Source: Mobula hypostoma (Eukaryota). Taken from it: a stretch of DNA of 64,000 bases. Positions 1 to 63,734 of the stretch are shown here, piece by piece. Each line of letters starts with the position of its first letter. Within the stretch, counting starts at the first letter, position 1. The notes under the pieces were generated by a model. That model did no database searches. It saw only the letters and a program-made list of their open reading frames with translations, and was not told where the DNA came from. The position numbers and the translations under genes were made by a program. Location: NCBI RefSeq assembly GCF_963921235.1, contig NC_086099.1, forward strand, positions 128,402,001 through 128,466,000. The letters are read 5' to 3'.

Positions 1-1910
1 AATTAGGAAGGGGAAAAAAGATTATGAGAGAAAACTGGCAGAGAACATAAAAACTGACTGTAAAAGCTTTTATAGATATGTAGAAAGGAAAAGACTGATA
101 AAGACAAATGTAGGTCCCCTGCAAACAGAAACAGGTGAATTGATTATGGGGAGCAAGGACATGGCAGACCAATTGAATAATTACTTTGGTTCTGTCTTCA
201 CTAAGGAGGACATAAATAATCTTCCAGAAATAGTAAGGGACAGAGGGTCCAGTGAGATGGAGGAACTGAGCGAAATACATGTTAGTAGGGAAGTGGTGTT
301 AGGTAAATTGAAGGGATTGAAGGCAGATAAATCCCCAGGGCCAGATGGTCTGCATCCCAGAGTGCTTAAGGAAGTAGCCCAAGAAATAGTGGATGCATTA
401 GTGATAATTTTTCAAAACTTGTTAGATTCTGGACTAGTTCCTGAGGATTGGAGGGTGGCTAATGTAACCCCACTTTTTAAAAAAAGGAGGGAGAGAGAAA
501 CCGGGGAATTATAGGCCGGTTAACCCAACGTCGGTGGTGGGGAAACTGCTGGAGTCAGTTATCAAGGATGTGATAACAGCACATTTGGAAAGCGGTGAAA
601 TGATCGGACAAAGTCAGCATGGATTTGTGAAAGGAAAATCATGTCTGACGAATCTCATAGAATTTTTTGAGGATGTAACTAGTAGAGTGGATAGGGGAGA
701 ACCAGTGGATGTGGTATATTTGGATTTTCAGAAGGCTTTTGACAAGGTCCCACACAGGAGATTAGTGTGCAAACTTAAAGCACATGGTATTGGGGGTAAG
801 GTATTGGTGTGGGTGGAGAATTGGTTAGCAGACAGGAAGCAAAGAGTGGGAATAAACGGGACCTTTTCAGAATGGCAGGCGGTGACTAGTGGGGTACCGC
901 AAGGCTCAGTGCTGGGACCTCAGTTGTTTACAATATATATTAATGACTTGGATGAGGGAATTAAATGCAGCATCTCCAAGTTTGCGGATGACACGAAGCT
1001 GGGTGGCAGTGTTAGCAGTGAGGAGGATGCTAAGAGGATGCAGGGTGACTTGGATAGGTTGGGTGAGTGGGCAAACTCATGGCAGATGCAATTTAATGTG
1101 GATAAATGTGAAGTTATCCACTTTGGTGGCAAAAATAGGAAAACAGATTATTATCTGAATGGTGACCGATTAGGAAAAGGGGAGGTGCAACGAGACCTGG
1201 GTGTCATTATACACCAGTCATTGAAAGTGGGCATGCAGGTACAGCAGGCGGTGAAAAAGGCGAACGGTATGCTGGCATTTATAGCGAGAGGATTCGAGTA
1301 CAGGAGCAGGGAGGTACTACTGCAGTTGTACAAGGCCTTGGTGAGACCACACCTGGAGTATTGTGTGCAGTTTTGGTCCCCTAATCTGAGGAAAGACATC
1401 TTTGCCATAGAGGGAGTACAAAGAAGGTTCACCAGATTGATTCCTGGGATGGCAGGTCTTTCATATGAAGAAAGACTGGATGAACTGGGCTTGTACTCGT
1501 TGGAATTTAGAAGATTGAGGGGGGATCTGATTGAAACGTATAAGATCCTAAAGGGATTGGACAGGCTAGATGCGGGAAGATTGTTCCCGATGTTGGGGAG
1601 GTCCAGAACGAGGGGTCACAGTTTGAGGATAGAGGGGAAGCCTTTTAGGACCGAGATTAGGAAAAACTTCTTCACACAGAGAGTGGTGAATCTGTGGAAT
1701 TCTCTGCCACAGCAAACTGTTGAGGCCAGTTCATTAGCTATGTTTAAAAGGAAGTTAGATATGGCCCTTGTGGCTACAGGGGTCAGGGGGTATGGAGGGA
1801 AGGCTGGGTTCTGAGTTGGATGATCAGCCATGATCATAATAAATGGCGGTGCAGGCTCGAAGGGCCGAATGGCCTACTCCTGCACCTATTTTCTATGTTT
1901 CTATGTTTCT
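1..1910 (+). mobile_element. Young CR1 LINE, 3' portion (ORF2 reverse transcriptase; extends beyond window start)
   Basis: ORFs 140-514 and 534-1814 give KSPGPDG, YLDFQKAFDKV, GVPQGSVLGP, KFADDTKL, RPHLEYCVQFW. One frameshift in the A-run at ~479-485. 3' tail (TTTCTATG)n at 1890-1910. Confidence 0.97.
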
Positions 1911-3794
1911 AAATGTGGTCAGCAACACTTGTAATGGACCTTCTCAGAGTATCTCCAGGTATTCTTTCATCGGTAGGCTCTCAACAGTACCCAATCTCAT
2001 GGCTAGTAGGTGCAGCACTCTGCAGCCAGCACAATCTCGTTGGCTTTAAATACCAGTTCATGGAAAGCTTTAAGAGTTTATTTTGTGCTATACAATTATG
2101 TAACATGCTTTCACTCAAAATAGATTTCCATCAGTTTAAATTTTAAAAAGTAGGGCAACTGGCAAGCGAATGGAATGTCCCAAAACTACCTCATGTAGAG
2201 GTAGGCCTTTTAAGCAGTTTGGCGTGCAGCACACTGTCGGGGGGCCAGTGGAAGTACCTCTGGACACTTTAGTTCTGTCTCTACATGCAGCTTAGCTAAC
2301 CTGCATTTCAAGGCCCCATTTGTCTTTCAGCTGCCCTGTAAGATTGAGGATGGCAAGGGCAGGTGAAATTATGCTTGCACTACAAGACTTTTAACAATTT
2401 TGCCCAGAAAGTGAGGACTATTATCACTTGAGATTTTCTTGGGGATTTCAAACCCAGCAATAAATTCTTATAATAAGAAAATAAAGTTATGGTATTATCT
2501 GAGTTAGATAAGTTTTTACCCATGGAGATAAACACAGTAACAAGAGCATAATCACAATCCAAATAGTTTTGTAACTGCATGAAGGCCATTTGGAGGTATA
2601 CAAAAACCCTCTTGGGGGAAGGCCCAGAGGTGGCAGATACTGGCAATGTCTGTCAGGATTAGGTCCCTGGCAAATCATACAATTACTACTACCTTTCTTG
2701 CTATGGTCAACAATCTCTCATTTTTGATTATATACATTATCCTTCATCATTTGGCATATAATGTGCTAATGTGTTTCAGTCTATAAAGTCATTTCAGCCT
2801 TTATGAACTGAAACACATGGATTTCATAATTGTCCACTGTCATGCACTACTCAAGGCACAATGAGATTCAGTGTAAATATTTACAGAAGCACCAGCTGCA
2901 ATGATGTAAGCTTTAAAACAAAAAGGTTCAGTTGCTTGAGCAGAACGGGAGGGAAGGTAGTTGTGGCACCTCAGGTGTTAATTCTGACGTGCACACACTG
3001 CATATTCACTAAACTGTTACCCAGCATCAGATCTAGAGGAAAGCCAAAAAAAAAACTACATGTAGGCTTATATGAGGTGGCATTTTACAAAAGGATGAAT
3101 TTAAAATCAATAAGTTCTTAAATACAGTTCAGGAACAGATCATTTAAACCATAGTCTATGGTGCTGGTGGGAGCAGAAATTGATGCATATAAAGCAGATA
3201 ATATTAAAACCAGAGTTGCCAGTGAAATTACAAGCAGAAGCATCTGGTAGCGATTAGCCAAACTTTGGTCACTGTCAATTTGGTTAAAATAGAAAATAAA
3301 AATGGCACCATTAAAATAACATTCAAATCCATTAGGACAGCTATCACAATACTTTTAAAGCAATGTACAATATTGCATCGAGGTTATAATAAAGCAGTCC
3401 GGGAAGTCTCAGAAATATTGCCCTTGTCCCCGTTAACAACTTTAATCAACTTTTGGCAATACAGTAAAACACCTGCAGTTTTACTTAACTCTCCCATCTC
3501 ACACAATTAACAGTTTTTTTTTCCCTTTAACATAAATTGCACCTTATTTACACCAACATTTATTAAGATTGGTGTCCCACTTCTAGAGTTAATCTGGAAT
3601 ACCTATGAAAATATTTTTGCATGCGTTCTAATGTCATTGTCTTTTGTACATACACTACGCATTTCCCCTGCAATCTACTGTGAGGGAAACATTTTCTTAC
3701 AGCTCCTACTAGATCAAATTAAGATCTATTTAAAATCAACATTTGGCTCATCCGCTCTGCACCCCTCCACCTCCTGTAGTGCTATTGGGGCGCG

Positions 3795-3880
3795 CACACA
3801 GACACACGATGGTGGAGGAACTCAGCAGGCCAGGCAGCATCTATGAAAGAGTATAGTCGACGTTTCGGTATGAGACCTTT
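3795..3880 (-). mobile_element. Penelope-like element (PLE) terminal-repeat fragment with truncated hammerhead
   Basis: GGAGGAACTCAGCAGGCCAGGCAGCATCTATG...AGTCGACGTTTCGG is shared with the other PLE copies in the window. Confidence 0.85.
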
Positions 3881-4564
3881 AAAGCTGTCTGATTCATGTA
3901 CAAACATGCATGCTACCAGAGTTCTTTAGAGGTTTGGGACAGGGAACTTTCACACTACCTTTCTTGCACACAAGTCATTTTGGAATTCCTTTTCTCGGGC
4001 CTCAGCGGTGCCATGGCCCAGGTATCAGCGACGCACCACATCTGAAAAAGTAGAGATGTTGCCAGGCCTTCTTTGTAATATCAATTACGTGCTGGTCCCA
4101 GGACACATTCTATAACACAAGCCCATAAATGCACTTGTAGACAATTATTAGTAATATAGGAAAGCAGAGGGAACAGTGATTAGGAAGTCATGATTGGAAA
4201 TGAGCAGACATTGAGCAGTAACAGCTGAAAGATAATACTTAATTGTTGAGAATGAAGGAATGGCAGATGTATTAAGTAAGCAATTTCCTGCAATTTTCAC
4301 AAAGGAATTGATTATTTGAGAATATAGAACAGATTTAAATACTTAAAAGATAATCAAGTTGAAGCCAAGACAAATGTACACAACCTTTTTACAACTAAGG
4401 ATACAGTAAAACTTCAAAAAGATTGCAGAGGATCTAGCTTGTTCAGTTAAATAAAACATTTTAAATATGTTGCATTACAAATAGTTCTTTGTAGCTGAAG
4501 TTTACTTTAGTTCAAACTTTCCTTGAGATTATATTGAAGAAAGCTGCAAGTAGAACACCTTCTG

Positions 4565-6430
4565 TCAGAGCAAGACACCAGTGATTAGTTTAGTACTTCT
4601 GCATTTAACTACACATCTCCCTTCTCCAGAGTTCACTCTGCTATCAATAATGGCTGATTTTTGTTTAAACTCCCAATACCCTGCTTTCTTGCAGTAAGCC
4701 TTAAATATCATACCAATCAAAAAACTAACTGCCTTAAATACACCCAACAATTTGGTCTCCACAGCCATCTACGGCTGTGACTTTTACTGATTTACCAAAG
4801 AAATTCTTCAGTTTTAAAGGCATGTCCCCTTATTCTGAAGCTGTGTCCCAAGATCCTGTACTCTTGACAAATGGAAACATCCTCATCACATCCATTTTAT
4901 CAAATCTTTCAGTATCCAGGTTTCAGTGAGATTCTTCAGAAGTCCAAAACCAGGCTCATAGATATCAAACACTCCCCACAGGTTTAGCCTTTCAATCTGG
5001 GATCGCTTGTGAACCTTCTCTGGACCCTCTTAAGGAACATCACATCCCTCCTTCAATACAGTACTGAAAATTGCTCTCAATATTCCAAATGTGGTCTGAC
5101 CATGTCATACAAAGCCTTCTTGCTTTTATATTCTCATCTAGCATGACTAAAGCAAAAAAAAATTCAGTTATCGTCCTTTACTCCAGCCAAAAAGGTTGAC
5201 CCTGTAACTAATCAATTTAAGCATCTTCAGCATTAAGTTATCTATTCTCTTCAACCCATGATTGTGGGTCATAACCCACACGCTGTAAATAAAGCATCGA
5301 TGGAGGAGTCAGAGACAAGTCCTTCTGCCCAAATGGTCCATGCAAAACACAGCATCCCCGAGCTTGTCTCAGTTGTTAACGCTCAACCCATAACCAAAAA
5401 CATTCCCCTCCATGTACTTATCCAAATGCCCCTTTAATGTTGCAATGCACCCACCTTGAGCACATCCTCTGGCAGTTCATTCTATTGTGTAAAAAGTTAC
5501 CTCAGGTCTTTAAAATCTCCCTTATGTTGCATTTGTGCCTTCTAGATTTGCAAGTCTTTCCACTTTATCTATACCCTTCATGATCTTATAAACTTCTACA
5601 GTCACTCCTCATTCTTCTATGGTCCAAGGAAACAAGATCCAGCATCTTCCTCTCCCTACAACTCAGACCTAGACCAGTCAGCATCCTCCAATCTCTTCTG
5701 CACCCTGTCCAGCTTGACAGTATCTCTAGTGACAACAGTACACAATTTTCCATGTAGTCTCATCAATCTCCATATCAGTAACAATTCCCCTACTCCTAAA
5801 GGAATGCACTGACTGAATGCCAGCATGCTAAATACCTTCAACACCACCCAGTCTTGTGCAGTCAATTTCAAACAGTGCACTTGCATTTCCAGATCCTTTT
5901 GTTCCACAACACTTGTACAGTGACTGGCAGGGCAGTGACAAATTCTAACCTGGTTCAAATGTCCAAATGCATCACCTCGTACTTAACCAAGTTGAAATCC
6001 ATTTGCCATTTCCAAGCCTATGCCCTTAACCGATCAGGATCGCTTTGCAATACATTATAACCTGCTTTGCTATCACCAAGCACCCCTAATTTAGCATTAT
6101 CAGCAAGCTTACTGATCATGCCAAAAAGATTCACACTGAAATCATATACATGCATAATAAATAAGAGGTCCCAACCTTGACTCCTGGGGCAGCCCAGTCA
6201 GAAAATCAATCTTCAACCATCACCCTCCGCTTCCAATTCTGAATCGATCTCTCTTGCTCCAAGTCATGTAACCTAACCTTTGAGGTCAGACTGCCATGCA
6301 GGACCTTGAAAATAGCCCTACTAAAGTCCACATAGTCAACATCCACTTCCCTACCCTTAATTTACTCTTTAAAAAAAACGCCAAAAGATTAGTCAGGCAT
6401 GACCTCATGTACAAAACCACACTGACTAAC
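4565..6430 (-). mobile_element. Cluster of degraded CR1 fragments
   Basis: Minus-strand remnants of CR1 ORF2 C-terminal/RT motifs (RSCLTNL, VDYVDFS-like, RPHLEY-like). Confidence 0.75.
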
Positions 6431-6515
6431 CAAGTAATGGTAGATCTATAGCTGGAATAGAGCACTTGAGGCAAACATGAAGACATTAAGATTTAACACA
6501 CACCTATATTTTCAT

Positions 6516-8850
6516 AGAACATTACAGCCTAGCACAGGCCCTTCAGTTGACGTTCTGCCATCCTCTTAACATAATAAGATTACTCTAACCTTTCCCTCCT
6601 ACACAGGGCTTCATTTTTTTTTATCATTCTTATGTCTAAAAGTTTCTTAATCCCCTTAATGTATCTGTCTTTACCATCACCTCCGGCAGCACATTCCAAA
6701 CACTTGCCACTCTGCCTAAAATACTTACCTCTGACTGCCCCCCATAAAACACTTTCCTCCAATTAACTTAAAATTATACACCCTCATATTAGCCATTTCC
6801 ATCCTGGGAAAGTCTCTGGCTATCTACTCAAATTGTCATCCTGTTTAATCCGTCAATTCACTTCTCATCCTCCTTTGCTCCAGCGAAAAGGACTATATTG
6901 CCCAAGACCTATCAGAAGACATGCTCTCTAAACCAGGCAACATCCTGGAAATTCTCCTCTGAACTCTCTCTGCATCCTTCCTATAATGTGACCAGAACTT
7001 ACACAATATGAATTGATTATGGGGAGCAAGGACATGGCAGACCAATTGAATAATTACTTTGGTTCTGTCTTCACTAAGGAGGACATAAATAATCTTCCAG
7101 AAATAGTAAGGGACAGAGGGTCCAGTGAGATGGAGGAACTGAGCGAAATACATGTTAGTAGGGAAGTGGTGTTAGGTAAATTGAAGGGATTGAAGGCAGA
7201 TAAATCCCCAGGGCCAGATGGTCTGCATCCCAGAGTGCTTAAGGAAGTGCCCAAGAAATAGTGGATGCATTAGTGATAATTTTTCAAAACTCGTTAGATT
7301 CTGGACTAGTTCCTGAGGATTGGAGGGTGGCTAATGTAACCCCACTTTTTAAAAAAGGAGGGAGAGAGAAACCGGGGAATTATAGGCCGGTTAGCCTAAC
7401 GTCGGTGGTGGGGAAACTGCTGGAGTCAGTTATCAAGGATGTGATAACAGCACATTTGGAAAGCGGTGAAATGATCGGACAAAGTCAGCATGGATTTGTG
7501 AAAGGAAAATCATGTCTGACGAATCTCATAGAATTTTTTGAGGATGTAACTAGTAGAGTGGATAGGGGAGAACCAGTGGATGTGGTATATTTGGATTTTC
7601 AAAAGGCTTTTGACAAGGTCCCACATAGGAGATTAGTGTGCAAACTTAAAGCACACGGTATTGGGGGTAAGGTATTGGTGTGGGTGGAGAATTGGTTAGC
7701 AGACAGGAAGCAAAGAGTGGGAATAAACGGGACCTTTTCAGAATGGCAGGCGGTGACTAGTGGGGTACCGCAAGGCTCAGTGCTGGGACCCCAGTTGTTT
7801 ACAATATATATTAATGACTTGGATGAGGGAATTAAATGCAGCATCTCCAAGTTTGCAGATGACACGAAGCTGGGTGGCAGTGTTAGCAGTGAGGAGGATG
7901 CTAAGAGGATGCAGGGTGACTTGGATAGGTTGGGTGAGTGGGCAAACTCATGGCAGATGCAATTTAATGTGGATAAATGTGAAGTTATCCACTTTGGTGG
8001 CAAAAATAGGAAAACAGATTATTATCTGAATGGTGGCCGATTAGGAAAAGGGGAGGTGCAACGAGACCTGGGTGTCATTATACACCAGTCATTGAAAGTG
8101 GGCATGCAGGTACAGCAGGCGGTGAAAAAGGCGAACGGTATGCTGGCATTTATAGCGAGAGGATTCGAGTACAGGAGCAGGGAGGTACTACTGCAGTTGT
8201 ACAAGGCCTTGGTGAGACCACACCTGGAGTATTGTGTGCAGTTTTGGTCCCCTAATCTGAGGAAAGACATCTTTGCCATAGAGGGAGTACAAAGAAGGTT
8301 CACCAGATTGATTCCTGGGATGGCAGGTCTTTCATATGAAGAAAGACTGGATGAACTGGGCTTGTACTCGTTGGAATTTAGAAGATTGAGGGGGGATCTG
8401 ATTGAAACGTATAAGATCCTAAAGGGATTGGACAGGCTGGATGCGGGAAGATTGTTCCCGATGTTGGGGAGGTCTAGAACGAGGGGTCACAGTTTGAGGA
8501 TAGAGGGGAAGCCTTTTAGGACCGAGGTTAGGAAAAACTTCTTCACACAGAGAGTGGTGAATCTGTGGAATTCTCTGCCACAGCAAACTGTTGAGGCCAG
8601 TTCATTAGCTATGTTTAAAAGGAAGTTAGATATGGCCCTTGTGGCTACAGGGGTCAGGGGGTATGGAGGGAAGGCTGGGTTCTGAGTTGGATGATCAGCC
8701 ATGATCATAATAAATGGCGGTGCAGGCTCGAAGGGCCGAATGGCCTACTCCTGCACCTATTTTCTATGTTTCTATGTTTCTAATATTCCAAGTGTGGGCT
8801 AACCAGTTTTACAGAGCTGCAACATTACCTCACGGTCTTGAACTCAATCT
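6516..8850 (-). mobile_element. Older CR1 3' remnant split by the young CR1 at 7010-8781
   Basis: Removing the insert restores ACACAATATTCCAAGTGTGG, the reverse complement of the PHLEYC coding motif. Confidence 0.85.
7010..8781 (+). mobile_element. Young 5'-truncated CR1 LINE, near-identical to the copy at 1-1910
   Basis: 474-aa RT ORF 7261-8685; 1-bp deletion at ~7248; (TTTCTATG)n tail; 5-bp TSD AATAT at 7005-7009 and 8782-8786. Confidence 0.97.
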
Positions 8851-9359
8851 GTGGAAGTTGCAGTAAGGCAAGAGTTAAAGACAACGTCCAAGCAAGAGGA
8901 GCCTGGACTAGTTGTGGTCAACCCTGCCCCGCCCCCAAACAAGTGGGGCCTCTGAAGTGAGACCTTCTCTAGAAAGTATTTAAAGAACATAGCCTCATTT
9001 TACACAGTAAGGGGTGCTAGAGACAGATGTGGTAGGAATACAAGAGAAGAAACAAAACACACCCAACAGCTAAGGGACAATTATTATACTAACTTAACTT
9101 ATCACTGGTTGTCAGCTTGCAGTCTCCACTGACTTACCACCACTGTTGTGAATGTTAATTGATCGTGCAAGTAAAGAATTCAAACATACAGTTTACCAAA
9201 TGATCAATACCCATTACTGAAGTTAATTTTGCATCAAGACATTTTTCTGTGCTGGCTTCAGAACAGCATGGTGATAAGAGCCTTATGCTCAAGTACAATA
9301 AAGTACGATTGAGGATTAAGTATGTGTATATTCTGAGTCCAGTTATCAGCAACAAATCC

Positions 9360-15933: not shown

Positions 15934-17409
15934 TATCCCGATCACTGAAAAAAGGAGAATGCTACAGGATCAAATCAGAAGAGCAATGAGCAGGTTTAGA
16001 CATGGAAAAGACATAACAGCTATCCCACAGCAGACAGTCAAATGACCAGTTTTGTATAAAAGGGATGGGGTCAGAATTAAAGATGATCAAACGCAAGTCT
16101 CTTTTCAATAAGAACATGGTTTAACTTCTACATTAATCTCACTTTTCTCCATAGTACCCTTGCATAAACTCTTGCTTTCCTAAAATAAAATTTGTCAGTT
16201 TTAATAGTTTATATGGACATCTGTTGTTTTTTATAGGCATCTGCTCCCTCTGAACTGAAAAGTTCAAAGGTTCCAAAGATCTGTAAGAACTACAAAACAA
16301 TGGAGAAAATTGGCAAGATCAGTACAGTTAGAGAAAATTATGAAAGATTATAAGCAGTGGTAGTAAGAATAAAAAGTACATACACACTAATATTGGTATT
16401 CTCATATGCCAGTTGAGAAGCAAAGTAAACATGAAGGCAAATACCTTCATGACCACTATTGCAAAACCACTAATACCCTCCCCAAAATGATACTAACACA
16501 TTGTCACACCATCCTGTCTAACAGGATTTCCTCATTCTCCTCAACTAAAACACATTGCTCTTCAACTAATTCTGTGGATTTATGATTTTTTTTTTTAAGA
16601 ACCACTTTGGTACTTTAGCACGGTAGAAAGTATGAAGAGCTCCGCTAAAGTTGCCTATAAACATCAAGAGTTGTAATTCTAAATATCAAGATGGCCATCA
16701 GGTTTTTGTTGATCTGACAACTTAAGTCCATAAGGATCAAAAGTAAGTTTATTATCGAAGTATATAGATGCCATCGTATACAACCGAGATTTTCTACAGG
16801 GATATTCAATAATTCCCTAATAAAATAATGAGACTAAAAATAATAATAGAATCAATGAACAACTGCAGCAACTTGGCCATTCAACCTGTGTGCAAAAGAA
16901 AAAAATGCAAATACAAAAGAAATAATAATAAACAAACAAGAAATATCAAGAACATGAGATGAATAGTCCTTGAAAGCAAGTCCATTGGTTGTGGGAACAT
17001 TTCCGTGAAGGAGCAACTGAAGTTGAGTGAAGTTATCTTTGGTTCAAGAGTCTAATGGTTAAGGGATAATAATTGTTCCTAAACCTGATGGTGTGGGTCC
17101 TTGAGGCTCCTGTAACTCCTTTCTGATGGCAGCAGCAAGAGAGGATGACCCCTGCAGTGGGAGGCCCTGATGATAGATGCTGCATTCATATAAGAATGCT
17201 TCGTGTAGGTGTGTTCTATGGTGGGGAGTGTACTTTATCCAGGCTGTGTCCACTACTTTTTGTAAGATTTTCTATTCAAGGACCTTGGTCTTTCCATACC
17301 AGGCTGTGATGCAGTCAGTCAATATACTGTCCACTACACATCTATATAATTTTGTCAAAGTTTTAAACATCATGCCAAGTTTTCTCAAACTCCAAAGTAA
17401 AGGTAGTGC

Positions 17410-17505
17410 AACATACATCAAAGTTGCTGGTGAACGCAGCAGGCCAAGCAGCATCTATAGGAAGAGGCGCAGTCGACGTTTCAGGCCGAGACCCTTCGTC
17501 AGGAC
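17410..17505 (-). mobile_element. 96-bp PLE mini-insertion with 9-bp TSD
   Basis: AGGTAGTGC at 17401-17409 and 17506-17514; the insert is the PLE terminal motif. Confidence 0.9.
17470..17505 (-). ncRNA. Minimal type I hammerhead ribozyme motif, catalytic core intact
   Basis: Minus strand GUC-CUGACGA-A-GGGU-CUCG-GCCU-GAAA-CG-UC|GACUG; stem I GUC/GAC; palindromic ACGU in place of stem III. Confidence 0.8.
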
Positions 17506-17814
17506 AGGTAGTGCCGTGCTTTCTTTGTAATTGCACTTATGTGCTGGGCCCTGGACAGGTCCTCTGAAATCATAACACCTAGTAATTTAAAGTTACTGAC
17601 CCTGTCCACCTCAATGAGAACTGGCTCATGGACCTCTGGTTTTCTTCTCCTGAAGTCAATAGTCAGCTCCTTGGTCTTGCTGAGATTAAGAGGTTATTGT
17701 TATGGAACCACTCAACCAGATTTTCAATCTCCCTCCAATATGCTGATTCATCACCACCCTTGATTCAGCCTATGACAGTCCATACACATGTACCAAGGGA
17801 AAAAATTCCCAATG

Positions 17815-25769: not shown

Positions 25770-26760
25770 GGAATAAAGTATGGTCATGCACTTTTGTAGA
25801 AGGAATAAACACAGACTATTTTCTAAACGGGAAGAAGCTTCAGAAATTGGATGTGCAAAGGCACTAGGGAATCCCAGTGCAAGATTCCCTAAAGATTAAC
25901 TTGCAGGTTGAGTCGATAGTAAGGAAGGCAAATACAATGTTAGCATTCATTTCTAGATAACTAGAATACAAAAGCAAGGATGTAATGCTGAGGCTTTATG
26001 AGGAATTGGACAGACTGTATTTGGAGTATAGAAAGCAGTTTCAGGCCCCACACCCAAGAAGGGATATGCTGACATTAGAGAGTATCCAGAGAAGGTTATA
26101 ATCGCAAGAGATTCTGAAGATTGCGGAAATCCAGATTAACATTCAAAATTCTGGAGAAACTCAGGTCAGGCAGCACCTATGGAGAGGAATAAAAGAGCCC
26201 ATGTTTCAGGCCAAGACTCTTCATCTGGTGAGTATTGATGAAGGTTTTCGACCCAAAATATTAGCTCTTTATTCCTCTCCAGATGCTGCCTGACTGCTGA
26301 GCTCCTCTAGAATTTTGTACATGTTATTCCAGAGAAGTCTTACAAGGAGGATTAGGGAATGAAATGATTAATATAAGAGGAACATTTGATGGCACTGGGC
26401 CTATATTCATTGGAGTCTAGAAGAATGAGGGGAGAACTCATTGAAACCTACCACATAATGAAAGACCTAGAAAGTGTGGACATGGAATAGATGTTTTCAA
26501 TAGTGGGAGTCTAGGACCAGTGGACAGATCCTCAAAAGAAGTACATTCCTTTAGAATAGACATGAGGAGTAATTTCTTTAGACAGTGGGTGGTGAATCTG
26601 TGGAATTTATTGCCACAGTTGTAGAGGCCAAGGCCTTGGGTATATCAAAAGCAGAGGTTGACTAGTTCTTGATTAATAAAGGGTTGTCTAAAGTATCAGT
26701 GAGAAGGCAGGAGAATGGGGTTGAGGGGGATAATAAATCAACTATGATTTAATGGTGGAG
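25770..26760 (+). mobile_element. CR1 3' fragment containing an old inverted PLE pair (~26101-26326)
   Basis: CR1 C-terminal motifs on both sides; inner GGAGAAACTCAGGTCAGGCAGCA / TGCTGCCTGACTGCTGAGCTCC inverted; TCCAGAGAAG duplicated at the junctions. Confidence 0.8.
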
Positions 26761-26984: not shown

Positions 26985-27390
26985 ACAAACAAGAGAAAGT
27001 CTACAAATGCTGGAAATCCAAGCAACACAAAAAATGCTGGAGGAACCCAGCAGGCCAGGCAGCATCTATGGAAAAAGAGTACAATCATTGTTTCAGGCTG
27101 AGACCCTTCATCAGAACTGGAGAAAAAAGATGAGAAGTCAGATTAAGAAGTGGGAGAGGAGAAGAAATATAGGACAGTAGGTGATAGTTGAAACCAGGAG
27201 CAGGTGAACTAAAAAGCTGGGAAGTCAACTGGTGGAAGAGGTAACGGCTAGAGAAGGGGGAATCTGACAGGAGAACACAGAATGCCATGGAAGGGAAGGG
27301 CGGAGGAGCACCAGATGGAGGTGATGGGCAGGTAAGGACATAGGGTGAGAGGGGGAAATGGGAATGCGGAATGGAGGGGGTGGGCATTAC
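26985..27390 (-). mobile_element. PLE pLTR with decayed hammerhead
   Basis: Minus strand CUGAUGA-AGGGUCUCAGCCU-GAAA-CAA (cleavage triplet mutated), with the family purine-rich tract. Confidence 0.85.
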
Positions 27391-28419
27391 AGGAAGTCAG
27401 AATGCTGGCTTACAACAAGAGAAACTAGCAGCATATGCACCTATTGAAACACAGTTTTGGAAAAACCACATTTTCTGTTTTTTTTGGGGGGGGAGACGCA
27501 TTGGCAAGAGTGTAACAGCTAATTGCTTTCCATTCTTTCATGGTGGATTTTGAAATAAGCCATTCTTGATTTCAATCTCAACGGAGATAAATTAGCACCA
27601 GATATTATTACAATTTCAACAACATTGTAGATTTTTAAAAACTTTAAATATATTTTCCAAGATATTCTCAGAACATGTAGAGATTCTAAAAATATGATTA
27701 AACAGCACCTTTACAGGACTTCATACAATTACTATGTGTTTAAAATATGTCTTTTTACTCCTGCCTTGGGTCGTTAAACTTGTCATAATAATGTGACTCT
27801 ACCATATTCCATCAGTTCAAGCCACGGCAGTGGAGCTTGAACTTAAATTTGAACAAATATAAATTCTAATCAATAATTCAAACATTTCAAGCAATGGTTT
27901 CCATTTCTTCAGTATAAAGGGCAGCCCAAACACCAAATTCTTTCAAAAACACAAACTTGAACTAAACACCAAAAAAATGAAATGAAAAAGTTGTTTTCAA
28001 TATGTCCGATTATGTCCCCTAAGAACACAAGCTTTAAATCTTGATTATTTCAAAACTGAAACAAGAGTTTTCCCAACAATAAACATGAAATTTCAAATGG
28101 GTAAAAGAGATGGAGAATAATTCAAGGCTAGTTAATCTGAAAGTCTTTCAACTTCAAACAACTCGTTAGGACATACAGGTTTAGGTGCACCCTTTATTAT
28201 TTCATGCAAATTTGTTTGCCTTAACACACGTTGAACAGCGCTATTATGGACACTTCTCAATATTTGCTACACACAGTGAAATCAGTTTCAAAAAAGCTTC
28301 AGAAAATCTTGACGATATGGTTATGTTAATAGTGGCAGACGTTCACAACATGAAAGTTTAAGTAAAGTCCGCAGTGTACGGGTGGATCCCCTGCAGTTAG
28401 TCTGCTGAGTGGTACTTAC

Positions 28420-29056
28420 CCTGCTGAATAGCCGGCGATTCCCCGTTATTTCCTGCAGTATTGTTGCCCCCGGCGGGAATGGGAATACTCAACTGCCGCT
28501 CGGGTTCCGGCAAGCAACGTTTGCAGAAGGAGTGAAGGCATGGGAGCAGCTTGGGTTCCTTTCCCTGCAGAGTATCTCGGCACACGGCGCACTCGTCCAA
28601 TAGGTTGAGGTTCACCTCCAAGGAGGCGGACGTCGCCGCCGCTACTGCTTTTTCTGGGCCCGCTCCCGGACTAGGTCCTGGCGCCGGACTCGGTCCGGAG
28701 CCCGGGCTCGGTCCTGGTCCAGGACTCGGACCCGGAGGGGGAGCGGATGTAGCAGAGATCGGTGCCTGGATCGGCACCGAGCTGAGGCACGCCCCCGGGC
28801 TGAGAACCGGACTGGCTCCAGGCCCCGGCACCTCGAAGACGGTGACCGGCGCGGCCGTTGGTGATGGTGTCGTCGTCGTCGGTGTCGTCACCGCTGCTGT
28901 CGGCGTTGATGTCGTTACTGTCACCACGGCCGCCAGAATCGCGCCCGCCTCCAACTCCGGCTTCTCCCGGCTCTCCCCGTCTTTGTCGGGCGGGCCGCTC
29001 TTTTCCTCACTGACGCCGTTTGCCTCGATATTAGTTCCACCTTTGTTTTCCGCCAT
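28420..29056 (-). CDS. TRIM33: E3 ubiquitin ligase TRIM33 (TIF1-gamma), coding exon 1 including the N-terminal part of the RING finger
   Basis: Starts [50 protein letters not shown] matches the TRIM33 RING. 637 nt, ending CAG CAG G|GTAAGT (phase-1 donor at 28419). Confidence 0.95.
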
Positions 29057-31196: not shown

Positions 31197-31349
31197 NNNN
31201 NNNNNNNNNNNNNNNNNNNNNNNNNNNNNNNNNNNNNNNNNNNNNNNNNNNNNNNNNNNNNNNNNNNNNNNNNNNNNNNNNNNNNNNNNNNNNNNNNNNN
31301 NNNNNNNNNNNNNNNNNNNNNNNNNNNNNNNNNNNNNNNNNNNNNNNNN
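31197..31349. other. Assembly gap (153 N)
   Basis: Run of N. Confidence 1.
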
Positions 31350-36283: not shown

Positions 36284-36794
36284 CTCTGAAGAAATAAAAA
36301 GAATGCATGGAAAAAATGCTAATATTTTTGCATTTATATGCACATGCTACGGTCTCCTTTTGTTACCTGAAAACCTGAGCATGAGCGTTTGAGAAATCTG
36401 ACCATTGCAATGCTCACCACCAGGAGATGCCATTGCTTTGCAAGATTACAAATAATAAACCAGATATGGATTAGGAAGCCCATTCAGCCCCACTAATCAA
36501 TAATAAAAATAAATTGCATATACTACCCAAGACCACCATCCAACTGTATATTGAACAGACAGAATTTCTGCTTCTGCTACCCTCAGCACTATCATTTATC
36601 AACATCAGTAGAAAACATTCATTAGCCAATATTTCATGTTCCAGTTCAAATTTCTTCAATGATTTAACAAAATGTGAGAGTCAGGATTTAACTTCCTAAC
36701 AATATCGTGAGGCAAATCTTTAGGACACAGCAGTGACCCAGGGATCTCGTTTTGGTCCTCACCCCATGACTTTGCACTTTCTCCCCATGGACCA

Positions 36795-37157
36795 AACATG
36801 AAGAAATCTGCAGATGCTGGAATTTCAAGCAACACACATAAAAGTTGCTGGTGAACGCAGCAGGCCAGGCAGCATCTCTAGGAAGAGGTACAGTCGACGT
36901 TTTGGGCCGAGACCCTTCATCAGGACTAATTGAAAGAAGAGCTAGTAATCAACTGTCCAGCTCTTGGCTCCATCCCTCCCCCTCCTGTCTTCTCCTATCA
37001 TATCAGATCTCCCCCTCCCCCTCCCACTTTCAAATCTCTTACTGGCTCTTTTTTCACTTAGTCCTGACGAAGTGTCTCGGCCCGAAACGTCGACTGTACC
37101 TCTTCCTAGAGTTGCTGCCTGGCCTGGTGCGTTCACCAGCAACTTTTATGTGTGTTG
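36795..37157. mobile_element. PLE insertion of two inverted pLTR ends, inside a V-SINE (~36720-37370)
   Basis: ~130-bp inverted arms; 14-bp TSD CTCCCCATGGACCA at 36781-36794 and 37158-37171. Confidence 0.92.
37059..37096 (+). ncRNA. Minimal hammerhead ribozyme motif (core intact, one stem II mismatch)
   Basis: UAGUC-CUGACGA-A-GUGU-CUCG-GCCC-GAAA-CG-UC|GACUG. Confidence 0.75.
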
Positions 37158-37919
37158 CTCCCCATGGACCATGTGGGTTTCTGCCAGGTGCTCCAATTTC
37201 CTCTCACGTGTGCTGGTAGATTAATAGGGTTGCACAAGTTAACCCACTAAAGTAGATGCCAAATGAACCAAATGGCAGTTGTTGGGTATGTGAGAGCAAA
37301 CAGGTTGCAATGGATTGGGACTGAGCTGACATGGACTCAATGAGCTGGAAGAACTTCTCTGTTGTAATGAATAATATACCACTGCTTCTTCTGGGACCCA
37401 CCATTGGTGAGTCTGGAGTCAGATAAGCAATTAAGGACTAGAAATGTCCTTCCCTAAAGGCAGAAGTGAACAAATGTGTTGCTTTAAGAACAATGCAATG
37501 GGCGTAGAGGGCGTACTTTGTATCTGTCCTCAGAGTTCAGCCTATATGTGCCTAGTCCGTCCATTTGTGTGTGAGGGGCCTGAAAATCAGGACTAATTTT
37601 GAGACTTCCCACTGTTGACTGTTTATCAGACAGGATTTCAAAGTTCAAAGTAAATTTTATTATCAAAGTATAAATATTGTATGTTAGTGCATACAGTCCC
37701 ATGATTCATTTTCTTGCGGGCATACTCAGCAAACCTATGGAATAGTGACTACCACAGGATCAAGGAAAGATCAGCCTGAGTGCAGAAAACACTTACATAC
37801 AAATATATAAATCTGAAGCCACATAGCTCCTGAAGCCTATTCAAACATTCAATAAAATCTTGGCTGATCAGATTGTAACCTCAATTTATCAATCTGTAAC
37901 CTCAACAATTTGTTTAGAA

Positions 37920-42732: not shown

Positions 42733-43588
42733 TAAACAAGAGCAACACACACAAAATGCCGGAGGAACTCAGCAGGCCAAGCAGCATCTATGGAAAACTC
42801 AGCGGCAGGACCACAGAAAAGAAGCTGAAGAGTAGATTTGAAAGGTGGGGGTAGGGAAGAGAGAAACACTAGGTGATAGGTGAAACTTGGAGGGGGAGGG
42901 ACGAAGTAAAGAGCTGGGAAATTGATTGGTGAGAGACAGAAGCCCATGGAAGAAAGAAAAAGGTGGAGGAGCTCCAGAGGGAGGCCATGGGCAGGCAAGG
43001 AGTTAAAATGAGGGAGGGAAAAGGGAATGGGAAATGGTGAAGTGGGGGGGGGGAGCAAATCTGGAAACTGAAATCGTGTGGCATAAGCTGGCAATGAAGA
43101 CATGTTCCCAGAAAGGATATATGGCTGTAGCAGCAGATCTGGGTAAGCACGAGGTCAAAGAGGTGGAGAGCAGCAGGGATCACAGTGGGGGAGCCATGAG
43201 AGAGAGTTCACTGAACTCCCATTTAAGGGAAGATTTAAACTTCTGCAGGGTAGGGCTTCCCCCCCCCTTCACCATTTCCCATCCCCTTTTCCTCCTTGAC
43301 CTTATCTCCTTGCCTGCCCATGGCCTCCCTCTGGAGCTCCTCCCTCCTTTTTCTTTCTTCCATGACCTTCTGTCTCTCACTAATCAACTTCCCAGCTCTT
43401 TACTTCATCCCTCCCCCTCCCGGTTCACCTATCACCTGGTGTTTCTCTCTCCCCTCCGCCCACCTTTTAAGTCTACTCGCCAGCTTTTTTTTCCAGTCCT
43501 GCCAAAGGGTTTCAGCCGAAATGGTGACTGTACTCTTTTGCGTAGATGCTGCCTGGCCTGCTGAGTTCCCCCAGCATTTTGTGTGTGT
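42733..43588 (-). mobile_element. Internally deleted Penelope element with inverted pLTR, inside a CR1 remnant (~42520-43775)
   Basis: ~320-bp inverted arms; the spacer encodes a PLE N-terminal-like YSHISFLGTCLHCQLMPHDF on minus. Confidence 0.85.
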
Positions 43589-44104
43589 ACCTCTGACATC
43601 CCTCTGTACTTTCACCTATCACCTTAAGATTATGCCCCCTATTATTAGCCATTTCTGCCCTGGGAAGAAGTCTGTAGCTGTCCATTCTCTATGCCTCTTA
43701 TCATCTTGTACACCTCTATCAAGTCACTTCTCATCCTCCCCCATTCCAAAGAGAAAAAGCCCTCGTTTGGTGAACTTGGCAACTTTACTTTGTGGTACTC
43801 ACTAACAGTATGATACTTATGTGAGCATTGCTAGTGGCACTAGCAGTTGCTAATGGCACCAGTGTGTACTAGTGAGGCCAGCAGCCTGAATGACCTATTT
43901 TTCCACCTCTTATTTGAGCAGCAACATGTGATCTATAACAGCCTAAAATTCTGACAACTGATGAACTTCATCCCTTTATCTTTGAAGGAGATACTGTACT
44001 TTCAAGCAGTTCCCTTTTCCCTCAGTAGGATCATGTGAGCAGCAGTGCCAGCAAATACTTTGCCCTTCCTTAACCCAGAGAAATTAAACCTCTCGCAGCT
44101 GTGA

Positions 44105-60850: not shown

Positions 60851-63734
60851 GTGGAAGAAATGCATGGAGTAAAGCCAGATATAATATATAAAGAGGCTTT
60901 AAGGAAAGAGAGGCAGAATAAAGGGTGTAAAGGTAGGAAGGTAGAAGGGCTAAAGTGTGTGTACTTCAATGCAAGAAGCATCAGGAACAAAGGTGATGAA
61001 CTGAGAGCTTGGATACATACATGGAATTATGATGTAGTGGCCATTACAAAGACTTGGCTGGCACCAGGGCAGGAATGGATTCTCAATATTCCTGGATTTC
61101 AGTGCTTTAAAAGGGATAGAGAGGGGAGGAAAAGGGGAGGAGAGTTGACATTACTGGTCAGGGATACTATTACAGCTACAGAAAGGGTGGGTAATGTAAC
61201 AGGATCCTCCTTTGAGTCAGTATGGGTGGAAGTCAGGAACAGGAAGGGAGCAGTTACTCTATTGGGAGTATTCTATAGGCCCCCTGGTAGCAGCAGAGAT
61301 ACCGAGGAGCAGATTGGGAGGCAGATTTTAGAAAGGTGCAAAAATAACAGGGTTGTTATCATGGGTGACTTTAACTTCCCTAATATTGAATGGCACCTGA
61401 TTTGTTCCAATGGTTTAGACGGAGCAGAATTTGTTAAGTGTGTTTAGGATGGATTCCTGTCACAGTATGTGGACAGGCCGACTAGGGGGAATGCCATACT
61501 AGATCTAGTATTAGGTAATGAACCGGGTCAGGTCACAGATCTGTCAGTGGGTGAACACCGGGGGGACAGTGAGCACCGCTCCCTGGCCTTTAATATTATC
61601 ATGGAAAAGGATAGAATCAGAGAGGACAGGAAAACTTTTAATTGGAGAAGGGAGAATTATGAGGCTATAAGGCTAGAACTTGCGGGTGTGAATTGGGATG
61701 ATGTTTTTACAGGTACTATGGACATGTGGTCGATGTTTAGAGATCTCTTGCAGGATATTAGGGATAAATTTGTCCCGGTGAGGAAGATAAAGAATGGTAG
61801 GGTGAAGGAACCATGGGTGACAAGAGAGGTGGAAAATGTAGTCAGGTGGAAGAAGGCAGCATACATGAGGTTTAGGAAGCAAGGATCAGATGGGTCTATT
61901 GAGGAATATAGGGAAGCAAGAAAGGAGCTTAAGAAGGGGCTGAGGAGAGCAAGAAGGGGGCATGAGGAGGCCTTGGCAAGAAGTGTAAAGGAAAAGCCCC
62001 AAGGCATTCTTCAATTACGTGAAGAACAAAAGGATGACAAGACTGAAGGTAGGACCGATTAGAGATAAAGGTGGGAAGAGATGCCTGGATGTGTGGAAGT
62101 GAGAGAGGTTCTCAATGACTACTTCTGTTCGGTATTCACCAATGAGAGGGAACTTGATGATGGTGAGGACAATATGAGTGAGGTTGATGTTCTGGAGCAT
62201 GTTGATATTAAGGGAGAGGAGGTGTTGGAGTTGTTAAAATACATTAGGACGGATAAGTCCCTGGGGCCTCATGGAATATTCCCCAGGCTGCTTCTCGAGG
62301 TGAGGAAAGAGATTGCTGAGCCTCTGGCTAGGATCTTTATGTCCTCGTTGTCCAATGGAATGAGACCGGTGGATTGGAGGGAGGCGATGTTGTCTCCTTG
62401 TTCAAAAAAGGTAATAGGGATAGTCCGGGTAATTATAGACCAGTGAGCCTTACGTCTGTGGTGGGAAAGCTGTTGGAAAAGATTCTTAGAGCTAGGATCT
62501 CTGGGCATTTAGAGAATCATGGTCTGATCAGGGACAGTCAGCATGGCTTTGTGAAGAGCAGATTGTGTCTAACAAACCTGATAGAGTTCTTTGAGAAGGT
62601 GACCAGGCATATAGATGAGGGTAGTGCAGTGGATGTGATCTACATGGATTTTAGTAAGGCATTTGACAAGGTTCCACATGGTAAGCTTATTCAGAACGTC
62701 AGAAGGCATAGGATCCAGGGAAGTTTGGCCGGGTGGATTGAGAATTGGCTTGCCTGCAGAAAGCAGAGGGTTGTGGTGGAGGGAGTATATTAGGATTGGA
62801 GGGTTGTGACTAGTGGTTTCCCACAAGGATCGGTTCTGGGACCTCTACTTTTTGTCATTTTTATTAATGACCTGGATGTGGGGGTAGAAGGGTGGGTTGG
62901 CAAGTTTGCAGACAACACAAAGGTTGGTGGTGTTGTGGGTAGTGTAGAGGATTGTCGAAGATTGCAGAGAGACAGTGATAGGATGCAGAAGAGGGCTGAG
63001 AAGTGGCAGATGGAATTCAACCCGGAGAAGTGTGATGTTGTACACTTTGGAAGAACAAATTCCAAGTCAGAGTACAAAGTAAATGGCAGGGTACTTGGTA
63101 GTGTGGATGAGCAGAGGGATCTGGGGGTACATGTCCACAGATCCCTGAAAGTTGCCTCACGGGTGGATAGGGTAGTTAAGAAAGCCTATGGGATGTTAGC
63201 TTTCATAAGTCGAGGGATAGAGTTTAAGAGCCGCGAGGTAAGGATGCAGCTCTATAAAACTCTGGTTAGGCCACACTTGGAGTACTGTGTCCAGTTCTGG
63301 TCACCTCACTATAGGAAGGATGTGGAAGCACTGGAAAGGGTACAGAGGAGATTTACCTGGATGCTGCCTGGTTTAGAAAGTATTCATTATGATCAGAGAT
63401 TAAGGGAGCTAGGGCTTTACTCTCTAGAGAGAAGGAAGATGAGAGGAGACATGATCGAGGTTTACAAGGTATTAAGAGGGATAGATAGAGTGGACAGCCA
63501 GCGCGTCTTCCCTGGGGCACCACTGCTCAGTAAAAGAGGACATGGCTTTAAGGTAAGGGGTGGGAAGTTCAAGGGGGAATTTGAGGAAGGTTTTTTACTC
63601 AGAGAGTGGTTGGTGTGTGGAATGCACTGCCTGAGTCAGTGGTGGAGGCAGATACACTGGTGAAATTTAAGAGACTACTAGACAGGTATATGGAGGAATT
63701 TAAAGTGGGGGGGTTATATGGGAGACAGGGTTTG
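60851..63734 (+). pseudogene. CR1 ORF2 (APE endonuclease + RT), disrupted
   Basis: YFNARSIRNK, GVFYRPP, MGDFNFP, LDLVL, YMDFSKAFDKV, PQGSVLGP, KFADNTK; several stops and frameshifts. Confidence 0.93.

What the first reader, a model, noticed from the sequence alone, without database searches (positions are those of the whole stretch)
17410..17505. A 96-bp mobile insertion that is essentially a hammerhead ribozyme, sense-oriented inside the TRIM33 pre-mRNA
Seen: between two AGGTAGTGC target-site copies, the minus strand (the TRIM33 sense strand) reads GUC-CUGACGA-A-GGGU-CUCG-GCCU-GAAA-CG-UC|GACUG. This has a complete CUGANGA/GAAA/UH core, a 4-bp stem II, a 3-bp stem I and the palindrome ACGU instead of stem III. 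The insert starts only 3 nt before the core. Known: Penelope-like elements carry such minimal type I hammerheads, thought to cleave as dimers through the palindrome. Inference: intron 1 could be cut co-transcriptionally between 17475 and 17474 if this motif pairs with another copy, in cis or in trans from PLE transcripts. That would make processing of a chromatin-regulator transcript sensitive to retroelement RNA. Other sense copies in the intron (3860, ~26210, ~27095) are mutated or truncated.
Basis: partly seen in the sequence, partly recalled or inferred. Interest (0 to 1): 0.8.

Follow-up and report, generated by a model that had tools for sequence, protein, structure and literature searches.

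The report
Truncated Penelope retroelement end with hammerhead
The 96-bp insert is real and carries a hammerhead-ribozyme motif on the TRIM33 sense strand, but it is one ordinary, cut-short copy of a hugely abundant Penelope-like retrotransposon, and nothing suggests that it cuts the TRIM33 transcript.

Summary
Window 17410-17505 is a 96-bp insertion flanked by a 9-bp duplication (AGGTAGTGC). Its minus strand carries a complete CUGANGA/GAAA/GUC hammerhead core. It lies in sense orientation, 11 kb into intron 1 of a TRIM33 orthologue.

The interpretation does not hold. The insert is the last 96 nt of a 3.5-kb autonomous Penelope-like element (PLE). That element has one 1042-aa ORF with reverse transcriptase and GIY-YIG endonuclease domains, and a hammerhead in each terminal repeat.

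- The exact 31-nt hammerhead occurs 50,271 times in this 3.48-Gb genome, and the adjacent 3' 20-mer occurs 108,017 times.
- The insert's 3' end is one of the family's two standard 3' ends. The other adds a 40-nt "tail", a published PLE signature.
- Its 5' end, 3 nt before the core, falls at the mode of the family's 5'-end distribution: 59% of 54 sampled copies start within about 130 nt of the 3' end.
- Truncation leaves 3 of the family's 5 stem I pairs. There is no helix III. The predicted monomer fold buries the core. No intact partner copy lies in the intron.
- Published assays of such minimal PLE hammerheads show no cleavage as single motifs.

RNA ends could not be tested. Verdict: an ordinary, very young, dead-on-arrival PLE fragment. 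Interest is low.

The parts
17410..17505 (-). 5'-truncated 3'-terminal fragment (96 nt) of an abundant Penelope-like retroelement
   Evidence: 95/96 identical to L044:963-1058, part of a full copy with a 1042-aa RT/GIY-YIG ORF. 100% identical to some other sampled copies.
17470..17505 (-). Minimal type I hammerhead motif: stem I 5' strand GUC, CUGACGA, unpaired A, helix II GGGU/CUCG/GCCU, GAAA, palindrome ACGU, C17 at 17475, stem I 3' strand GAC
   Evidence: Read directly. Pattern statistics. No Rfam hammerhead model matches.
17410..17474 (-). 65 nt from the predicted cleavage site to the element's proximal 3' end (the no-tail reverse-transcription start); contains the ATG that opens the 1042-aa frame in the full copy L044
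   Evidence: Same 3' end as the full copy L044 (position 4576) and about half of 54 sampled copies.
17401..17409 (.). Target-site duplication, copy 1 (AGGTAGTGC)
   Evidence: empty-site check.
17506..17514 (.). Target-site duplication, copy 2 (AGGTAGTGC)
17151..17760 (-). Degraded LINE (reverse-transcriptase C-terminal region) that received the insertion
   Evidence: With the insert removed, the translation reads ...VDRVSNFKLLGVMISEDLS...ITKKARHYLYF...LRKLGM...; paralogous copies align across the junction.
28421..29056 (-). TRIM33-orthologue exon 1 (MAENKGG..., RING finger), with a GTAAGT donor immediately after it at 28414-28419

Best explanation
The insert is a very young, dead-on-arrival copy of an active Penelope-like retroelement (PLE). 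Shown: the PLE's GIY-YIG/RT machinery left a 9-bp target duplication in an old LINE within TRIM33 intron 1. The copy ends at the family's proximal 3' end. It stops about 96 nt upstream, 3 nt before the hammerhead core. Inferred from the published Anolis PLE: reverse transcription began internally at that proximal site. The hammerhead motif is simply part of the PLE terminal repeat that was copied along. In this isolated copy it has 3 of the family's 5 stem I pairs, a G10.1-U11.1 wobble, and only the 4-nt ACGU palindrome in place of helix III. Its predicted preferred fold pairs GACG of the core with CGUC at the cleavage site. Inferred: as a lone motif in the TRIM33 pre-mRNA it is catalytically inert or nearly so. 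The insertion is then a neutral intronic passenger, removed with the intron.
For: The full copy L044 has the hammerhead at 966-996, a 1042-aa ORF at 1054-4182, and a second hammerhead at 4482-4512, giving a 3516-nt unit. The ORF hits RVT_1 at residues 533-682 and GIY-YIG at 945-1019. Other copies give RVT_1 E 2e-5 and GIY-YIG E 1.7e-4. The C-terminus reads CKRNKCYTC...GVIYCVRCSRCGLLYIGETRRRLGDRFAEH. The insert matches L044:963-1058 at 95/96, and some sampled copies at 100%. Genome counts are 50,271 exact 31-nt hammerheads and 108,017 exact 3' 20-mers, with 0 in the controls. All 65 scored reverse-transcriptase matches are 96-100% identical, and many have open 1043-aa frames. In 54 sampled copies the 3' ends are bimodal, at about 1058 or about 1098. 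This matches the 30-40-nt PLE 'tail' lying between two internal reverse-transcription start sites (PMC11167929). The 5' ends are concentrated around the hammerhead: 32 of 54 at 930-1025, with a mode at 958-972. Fold energies are -9.6 kcal/mol for the inactive hairpin against -5.6 for stems I+II. The other sense copies in the intron have broken cores or have lost the GUC/ACGU. From the literature: a single minimal PLE hammerhead showed no detectable cleavage, and dimers only low activity at high Mg2+ (PMC4209133). The Anolis PLE hammerhead cleaved only with PLE protein present, was dispensable for insertion, and no RNA-seq reads ended at its site (PMC11167929).
Against: The catalytic core nucleotides are all intact. 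PLE transcripts and PLE protein are probably present in cells of this animal, since many copies have intact ORFs, so protein-assisted or trans-dimer cleavage cannot be excluded. The Pfam hits for RT and GIY-YIG are below the curated gathering scores.
Confidence: 0.86

Rival explanations
1. One reading: the motif pairs through its ACGU palindrome with a second copy, in cis or in trans from PLE transcripts. It then cuts TRIM33 intron 1 co-transcriptionally between 17475 and 17474, making TRIM33 expression sensitive to retroelement RNA.
For: The core is intact and sense-oriented. The family looks active, so partner RNA and PLE protein may exist. A PLE hammerhead can cleave when its protein is present (PMC11167929). 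An intronic self-cleaving ribozyme is reported to affect CPEB3 expression (PMC10274809, title and abstract seen).
Against: Stem I is cut to 3 bp, and G10.1-U11.1 replaces the conserved G-C. A 4-bp intermolecular helix is very weak, and a competing inactive hairpin is predicted. No intact sense copy lies in the 28 kb of intron in the window. With one identical motif per about 69 kb of genome, thousands of introns would be affected, so TRIM33 is not singled out. Single motifs are inactive in vitro, and no RNA-seq ends were seen at the Anolis site. In my recollection, ribozyme cleavage within an intron does not by itself prevent splicing.
Confidence: 0.04
2. The 96-nt class is not a random 5' truncation but the copy of a discrete short template or a programmed stop. 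Either PLE RNAs begin just upstream of the hammerhead (a terminal-repeat promoter) and reverse transcriptase primed at the first start site runs off the 5' end, like a strong-stop product. Or the folded or protein-bound hammerhead makes reverse transcriptase stop or switch template there. The identity of the insert is the same as in the best explanation; only the origin of its 5' end differs.
For: 5' ends are about 25-fold denser per nucleotide at 930-979 than at 400-930: 25 against 11 ends in 54 copies. There are few ends between the cluster and the 3' end, which simple low processivity would not give. Many junctions with inverted partner copies fall at the same place. The Anolis PLE shows raised RNA coverage at the terminal repeat-ORF junction.
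Against: The ends spread over about 50 nt rather than falling at one base. The sample is 54 copies from one chromosome arm. No start-site or RNA data are available for this species. Full-length copies such as L044 extend 560 nt further upstream, so longer templates exist.
Confidence: 0.3
3. The insert is a unit of a non-autonomous 'non-LTR retrozyme', a hammerhead-bearing tandem repeat that moves through circular RNA.
For: Animal retrozymes are related to PLE terminal repeats and carry type I hammerheads (bioRxiv 10.64898/2026.07.22.740005).
Against: It is a single copy, not a tandem array. Its ends are not at the cleavage site, as a processed unit's would be. Its sequence is collinear with the autonomous element, and its 3' end is the PLE reverse-transcription start.
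Confidence: 0.02

Closest known systems
Minimal hammerhead ribozymes (min-HHR) in the terminal repeats of Penelope-like elements (Cervera & De la Pena 2014, PMC4209133)
   Same: CUGANGA and GAAA boxes and a GUC cleavage triplet. [quoted passage not shown] A palindromic 15.2-16.2 (ACGU) in place of helix III. A short helix I. Located in the PLE terminal repeat. Massive genome-wide scatter as single motifs and as close inverted pairs.
   Different: Helix II has only 4 bp with a CUCG loop, against 7-8 bp in the Schistosoma families. The dominant young lineage has G10.1-U11.1 rather than the conserved G-C (84 of the first 100 listed copies). The copy number, over 50,000 exact motifs, exceeds the 4,000-9,000 reported for coelacanth and Xenopus. 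This particular copy has lost two stem I pairs.
Poseidon PLE of Anolis carolinensis (PAc; Frangieh et al. 2024, PMC11167929)
   Same: [quoted passage not shown] A hammerhead at the terminal repeat-ORF junction. Two alternative 3' ends separated by a 30-40-nt tail. 5' truncation. Head-to-head inverted copies, consistent with both DNA strands being cut and extended.
   Different: Here the hammerhead lies wholly upstream of the ORF, with the cut site 60 nt before the first ATG of the open frame. The proximal 3' end falls 4 nt into that frame rather than 111-118 nt into it. Clade assignment (Poseidon or Neptune) was not tested.
Conserved intronic hammerheads of amniotes (HH9 in RECK, HH10; De la Pena & Garcia-Robles 2010, cited in PMC6155905) and the intronic CPEB3 ribozyme
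   Same: A self-cleaving-ribozyme motif lying in sense orientation in an intron of a protein-coding gene. The amniote hammerheads are thought to derive from retroelements.
   Different: Those are canonical, monomer-competent motifs with loop-loop tertiary contacts, and they are conserved across classes of vertebrates. This one is a minimal motif without helix III. It is identical to tens of thousands of repeat copies, shows no sign of age or conservation, and does not match Rfam RF02275 or RF02277.

Membership tests
Penelope-like retroelement (PLE) | Single ORF combining a reverse transcriptase with a C-terminal GIY-YIG endonuclease | tested here: met
   In the L044 1042-aa ORF, RVT_1 hits residues 533-682 and GIY-YIG hits 945-1019. 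Stronger hits come from other copies. The GVIY...LYIGET...R..EH motif with an upstream CxxxxCxxC is read directly. All Pfam scores are below gathering thresholds, so this rests on two concordant weak hits plus the motifs.
Penelope-like retroelement (PLE) | Partial-tandem structure giving pseudo-LTRs that flank the ORF | tested here: met
   L044 repeats the same 660-nt segment, including the hammerhead, before and after the ORF, 3516 nt apart.
Penelope-like retroelement (PLE) | Optional 30-40-nt 'tail' giving two alternative 3' ends | tested here: met
   The 54 sampled copies end at about 1058 or about 1098 in L044 coordinates, roughly half each. The window insert uses the proximal end.
Penelope-like retroelement (PLE) | Frequent 5' truncation, head-to-head inverted copies, and target-site duplications of variable length | tested here: met
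   Duplications of 9 bp (this insert), 13 bp (window 36781/37158) and 14 bp (L005) were seen.
PLE minimal hammerhead (min-HHR) | Catalytic boxes CUGANGA and GAAA with a UH cleavage site | tested here: met
   CUGACGA, GAAA and GUC are read directly.
PLE minimal hammerhead (min-HHR) | [quoted passage not shown] | tested here: met
   An A follows CUGACGA, and the palindrome is ACGU. The criteria are taken from PMC4209133.
PLE minimal hammerhead (min-HHR) | Conserved G10.1-C11.1 pair | tested here: not met
   This copy and 84 of the first 100 listed genome copies have GCCU (a G-U wobble); 16 have GCCC.
PLE minimal hammerhead (min-HHR) | Helix I of 4-5 bp | tested here: not met
   Intact family members can pair GUUAGUC with GACUG over 5 bp (L044). 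The window copy keeps 3 bp because the element starts at GUC and the flank does not extend the helix.
PLE minimal hammerhead (min-HHR) | Self-cleavage | not testable with these tools
Rfam hammerhead families (RF00163, RF00008, RF02275, RF02276, RF02277) | Score at or above the family gathering threshold | tested here: not met
   No match at gathering over the whole window. No hammerhead match even at E up to 10 over 17350-17570. This is expected for a motif with no helix III.
Non-LTR retrozyme | Tandem repeats of a hammerhead-bearing unit | tested here: not met
   It is a single copy. The nearest family copies in the window are more than 9 kb away and degenerate.
Domesticated intronic hammerhead (HH9/HH10 type) | Orthologous conservation across species | not testable with these tools
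Complete identity to the active repeat family argues for a very recent insertion.

The most novel reading that the evidence does not exclude
In cells where this PLE family is expressed, PLE protein or PLE RNA might activate isolated sense-strand hammerheads in host introns, this one included. Retroelement activity would then trim nascent transcripts of thousands of genes, among them TRIM33, itself a chromatin regulator.
Probability: 0.04. Interest if true: 0.75.

Novelty: new member of a known kind. Interest (0 to 1): 0.15.

Why it matters
For TRIM33 it almost certainly does not matter. The insert is one of tens of thousands of identical retroelement fragments, and an intron is the usual place to find one. 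The family behind it is more interesting. It is a very young, very abundant PLE with many intact ORFs, and its copies show in vivo the two 3' ends seen in vitro for the Anolis element. It also shows a sharp pile-up of 5' ends at the hammerhead. That makes this genome a good natural data set for asking what the PLE hammerhead does during retrotransposition.

Tried and rejected
- **Rfam:** searches at gathering and at E up to 10 found no hammerhead.
- **Whole-genome DNA search with the 96-mer:** returned nothing because very common words are skipped. Shorter patterns worked.
- **Read laying:** So there is no test of RNA ends, of transcription across the insert, or of presence/absence in the related species. 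All listed runs were contigs only, which could not have shown RNA ends anyway.
- **The fetch from genomes:** This limited the 5'-end sample to 54 copies.
- **PDB sequence search with the PLE ORF:** no hits.
- **L033:** its ORFs turned out to be an unrelated LINE with an APE endonuclease, not the PLE.
- **Apparent 790-nt unit:** the 5' boundary seen at L005:845 was only that copy's truncation point; other copies continue upstream into the endonuclease coding region.
- **Pile-up of 5' ends at the ribozyme cut site:** this would have indicated cleaved templates. It was not seen; at most 1 of 54 copies, and that one is ambiguous.
- **RNAcofold:** it cannot represent the double-hammerhead topology, so no dimer energy is claimed.

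Full report
**Observation.** The + strand carries AGGTAGTGC at 17401-17409 and again at 17506-17514, bracketing exactly 96 bp. Read on the minus strand, the insert begins GTC-CTGACGA-A-GGGT-CTCG-GCCT-GAAA-CG-TC|GACTG.

The motif is not a chance match. A loose hammerhead pattern is expected 0.01 times per window and occurs twice. The 36-mer has three matches at up to 3 mismatches against none expected.

With the insert and one repeat copy removed, the flanks join into a degraded LINE reverse-transcriptase C-terminus (…ITKKARHYLYF…LRKLGM…). Three diverged paralogous LINE copies align straight across the junction. This is therefore a genuine insertion with a 9-bp target-site duplication.

**Gene context.** A minus-strand open frame at 28421-29056 starts MAENKGG, carries a RING finger and ends at a GTAAGT donor. 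It is 73% identical over its full length to a transcript-derived protein, P0001. That protein continues [26 protein letters not shown]…, as does a dingo protein, P0011. From my own knowledge I recognise that sequence as TRIM33/TIF1-gamma. No further exon was detected at 1-28420. The insert therefore lies about 11 kb into intron 1, with the hammerhead on the sense strand.

**What the insert is.** The exact 31-nt hammerhead (two positions degenerate) occurs 25,115 + 25,156 times in the 3.48-Gb assembly and 0 times in the reversed control. That is one per about 69 kb. A 20-mer from the insert's 3' part occurs 108,017 times.

Following copies upstream showed that the sequence 5' of the hammerhead is a C-rich untranslated stretch preceded by coding sequence. 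One complete copy, L044, has:
- a hammerhead at 966-996;
- a 1042-aa ATG-initiated ORF at 1054-4182;
- a second hammerhead at 4482-4512, giving a unit of 3516 nt.

The ORF hits RVT_1 (residues 533-682) and GIY-YIG (945-1019). Other copies give somewhat stronger hits. The C-terminus reads CKRNKCYTC…GVIYCVRCSRCGLLYIGETRRRLGDRFAEH. A reverse transcriptase fused to a GIY-YIG endonuclease, flanked by hammerhead-bearing pseudo-LTRs, defines a Penelope-like element (PMC4209133, PMC11167929).

All 65 scored genomic matches to the reverse-transcriptase ORF are 96-100% identical, and many have uninterrupted 1043-aa frames. The family is therefore young and probably active. The window insert equals L044:963-1058 with one difference. 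That difference is a common subfamily variant, and some sampled copies are 100% identical to the insert. The insertion is therefore very recent.

The 3' ends are bimodal, at about 1058 or about 1098, roughly half each. The extra 40 nt (GCTTGAATTTCCAGCATCTGCAGAATTCCTGTTGTTTGC) matches the optional 30-40-nt PLE "tail". Frangieh et al. traced that tail to two adjacent internal reverse-transcription start sites. The window insert ends at the proximal site, as does the full copy L044.

The 5' ends are far from uniform:
- 12 copies run at least 640 nt upstream;
- 11 end between 467 and 751;
- 32 (59%) end at 930-1025, of which 25 fall at 930-979, with a mode at 958-972.

The insert's 5' end at position 963, 3 nt before the core, is therefore the commonest class rather than a special feature. 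Why ends pile up there is open. Possible causes are an RNA 5' end, a reverse-transcriptase stop at the folded or protein-bound ribozyme, or template switching to the opposite-strand cDNA. At most one copy begins at the ribozyme cut site (993|994), and that case is ambiguous. The copies thus give no sign that cleaved RNAs serve as templates.

Head-to-head inverted pairs are frequent. One lies in the window at 36794-37157, with a 13-bp duplication. This fits the published finding that the PLE enzyme cuts and extends both DNA strands.

**Could it cut TRIM33 pre-mRNA?** All core nucleotides are present, but several features argue against activity.
- Intact family members can form a 5-bp stem I (GUUAGUC/GACUG). 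Truncation leaves 3 bp here, and the flank does not extend the helix.
- Position 11.1 is U, giving G10.1-U11.1 in place of the pair reported as highly conserved. The same is true of 84 of the first 100 listed copies. This suggests the active lineage tolerates a weakened ribozyme.
- There is no helix III. Only the ACGU palindrome remains, which could offer a 4-bp intermolecular helix.
- The monomer's minimum-energy fold pairs GACG of the CUGACGA box with CGUC at the cleavage site. It scores -9.6 kcal/mol, against -5.6 for stems I+II alone.
- The other sense-strand copies in the intron (about 3800-3880, 26106-26228, 26988-27130) have lost core bases, the GUC or the palindrome. No cis partner exists within the 28 kb seen.

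Published experiments point the same way. A single minimal PLE hammerhead showed no detectable cleavage, and dimers cleaved poorly and mainly at non-physiological Mg2+. The Anolis PLE hammerhead cleaved only with PLE protein present and was dispensable for insertion, and no RNA-seq reads ended at its site. With more than 50,000 identical motifs in the genome, any trans-activated cleavage would affect thousands of genes rather than TRIM33 specifically.

I could not test RNA ends.

**Comparison with known systems.** The motif meets most criteria of the PLE minimal hammerhead of Cervera & De la Pena. It fails the G10.1-C11.1 criterion and, in this copy, the helix I length criterion. It matches no Rfam hammerhead model. 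It is not a tandem retrozyme unit. It also differs from the conserved, monomer-competent intronic hammerheads of amniotes and from the CPEB3 ribozyme.

**Verdict.** The mobile-element origin is confirmed and refined. The functional inference is unsupported. This is an ordinary 5'-truncated PLE fragment, a new member of a known kind, and of low interest for TRIM33. The PLE family itself, with its end distributions, is the more useful by-product.

Noticed in passing
G000 genome-wide; reference copy L044 (G000:C36:131851193-131856070): A very young, very abundant PLE family. There are 103,110 first-look candidates for its reverse-transcriptase ORF. All 65 scored matches are 96-100% identical, and many have uninterrupted 1043-aa frames. 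The 3' 20-mer occurs 108,017 times.
   Followed up: partly
L045-L094 (54 copies), in L044 coordinates: The 5' ends of copies pile up in a 50-nt zone around the hammerhead (positions 930-979, about 25-fold denser per nt than at 400-930). They do not decay smoothly from the 3' end. Virtually none start at the ribozyme cut site. The cause is unknown.
   Followed up: partly
L045-L094; L044:1059-1098: The 3' ends are bimodal, with or without a 40-nt tail, about half each. This is a natural-population counterpart of the two in vitro reverse-transcription start sites reported for the Anolis PLE.
   Followed up: yes
window 36794-37157: A head-to-head inverted pair of PLE 3' ends, with 121-nt arms 93% complementary and a 90-nt spacer. 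Both 3' ends face outward, one with the tail and one without. It is flanked by a 13-bp duplication, CTCCCCATGGACC (36781-36793 and 37158-37170). It lies about 7.7 kb upstream of TRIM33 exon 1.
   Followed up: yes
window 42741-43602: A second, older and larger inverted PLE arrangement, with arms and upstream segments in mirror orientation. The overlapping ORFs there have no Pfam hits.
   Followed up: no
genome copies listed: The dominant young lineage carries G10.1-U11.1 (GCCU), whereas older copies and 16% of exact copies carry the canonical G-C (GCCC). The most successful lineage thus has a weakened helix II closing pair.
   Followed up: partly
window 17470-17505 (-): In CUGACGA variants, the core's GACG is complementary to CGUC at the cleavage site, giving a rod-like inactive hairpin. 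GUCGAC spanning the cut site is also a 6-nt palindrome that could form an unproductive dimer.
   Followed up: partly
window 31197-31349: A run of 153 N, an assembly gap or masked stretch. It was left untouched.
   Followed up: no
window 534-1814, 7261-8685, 60851-63663: Several LINE fragments with RVT_1 and APE-endonuclease domains on the + strand. The intron and the upstream region are dense with retroelements.
   Followed up: no
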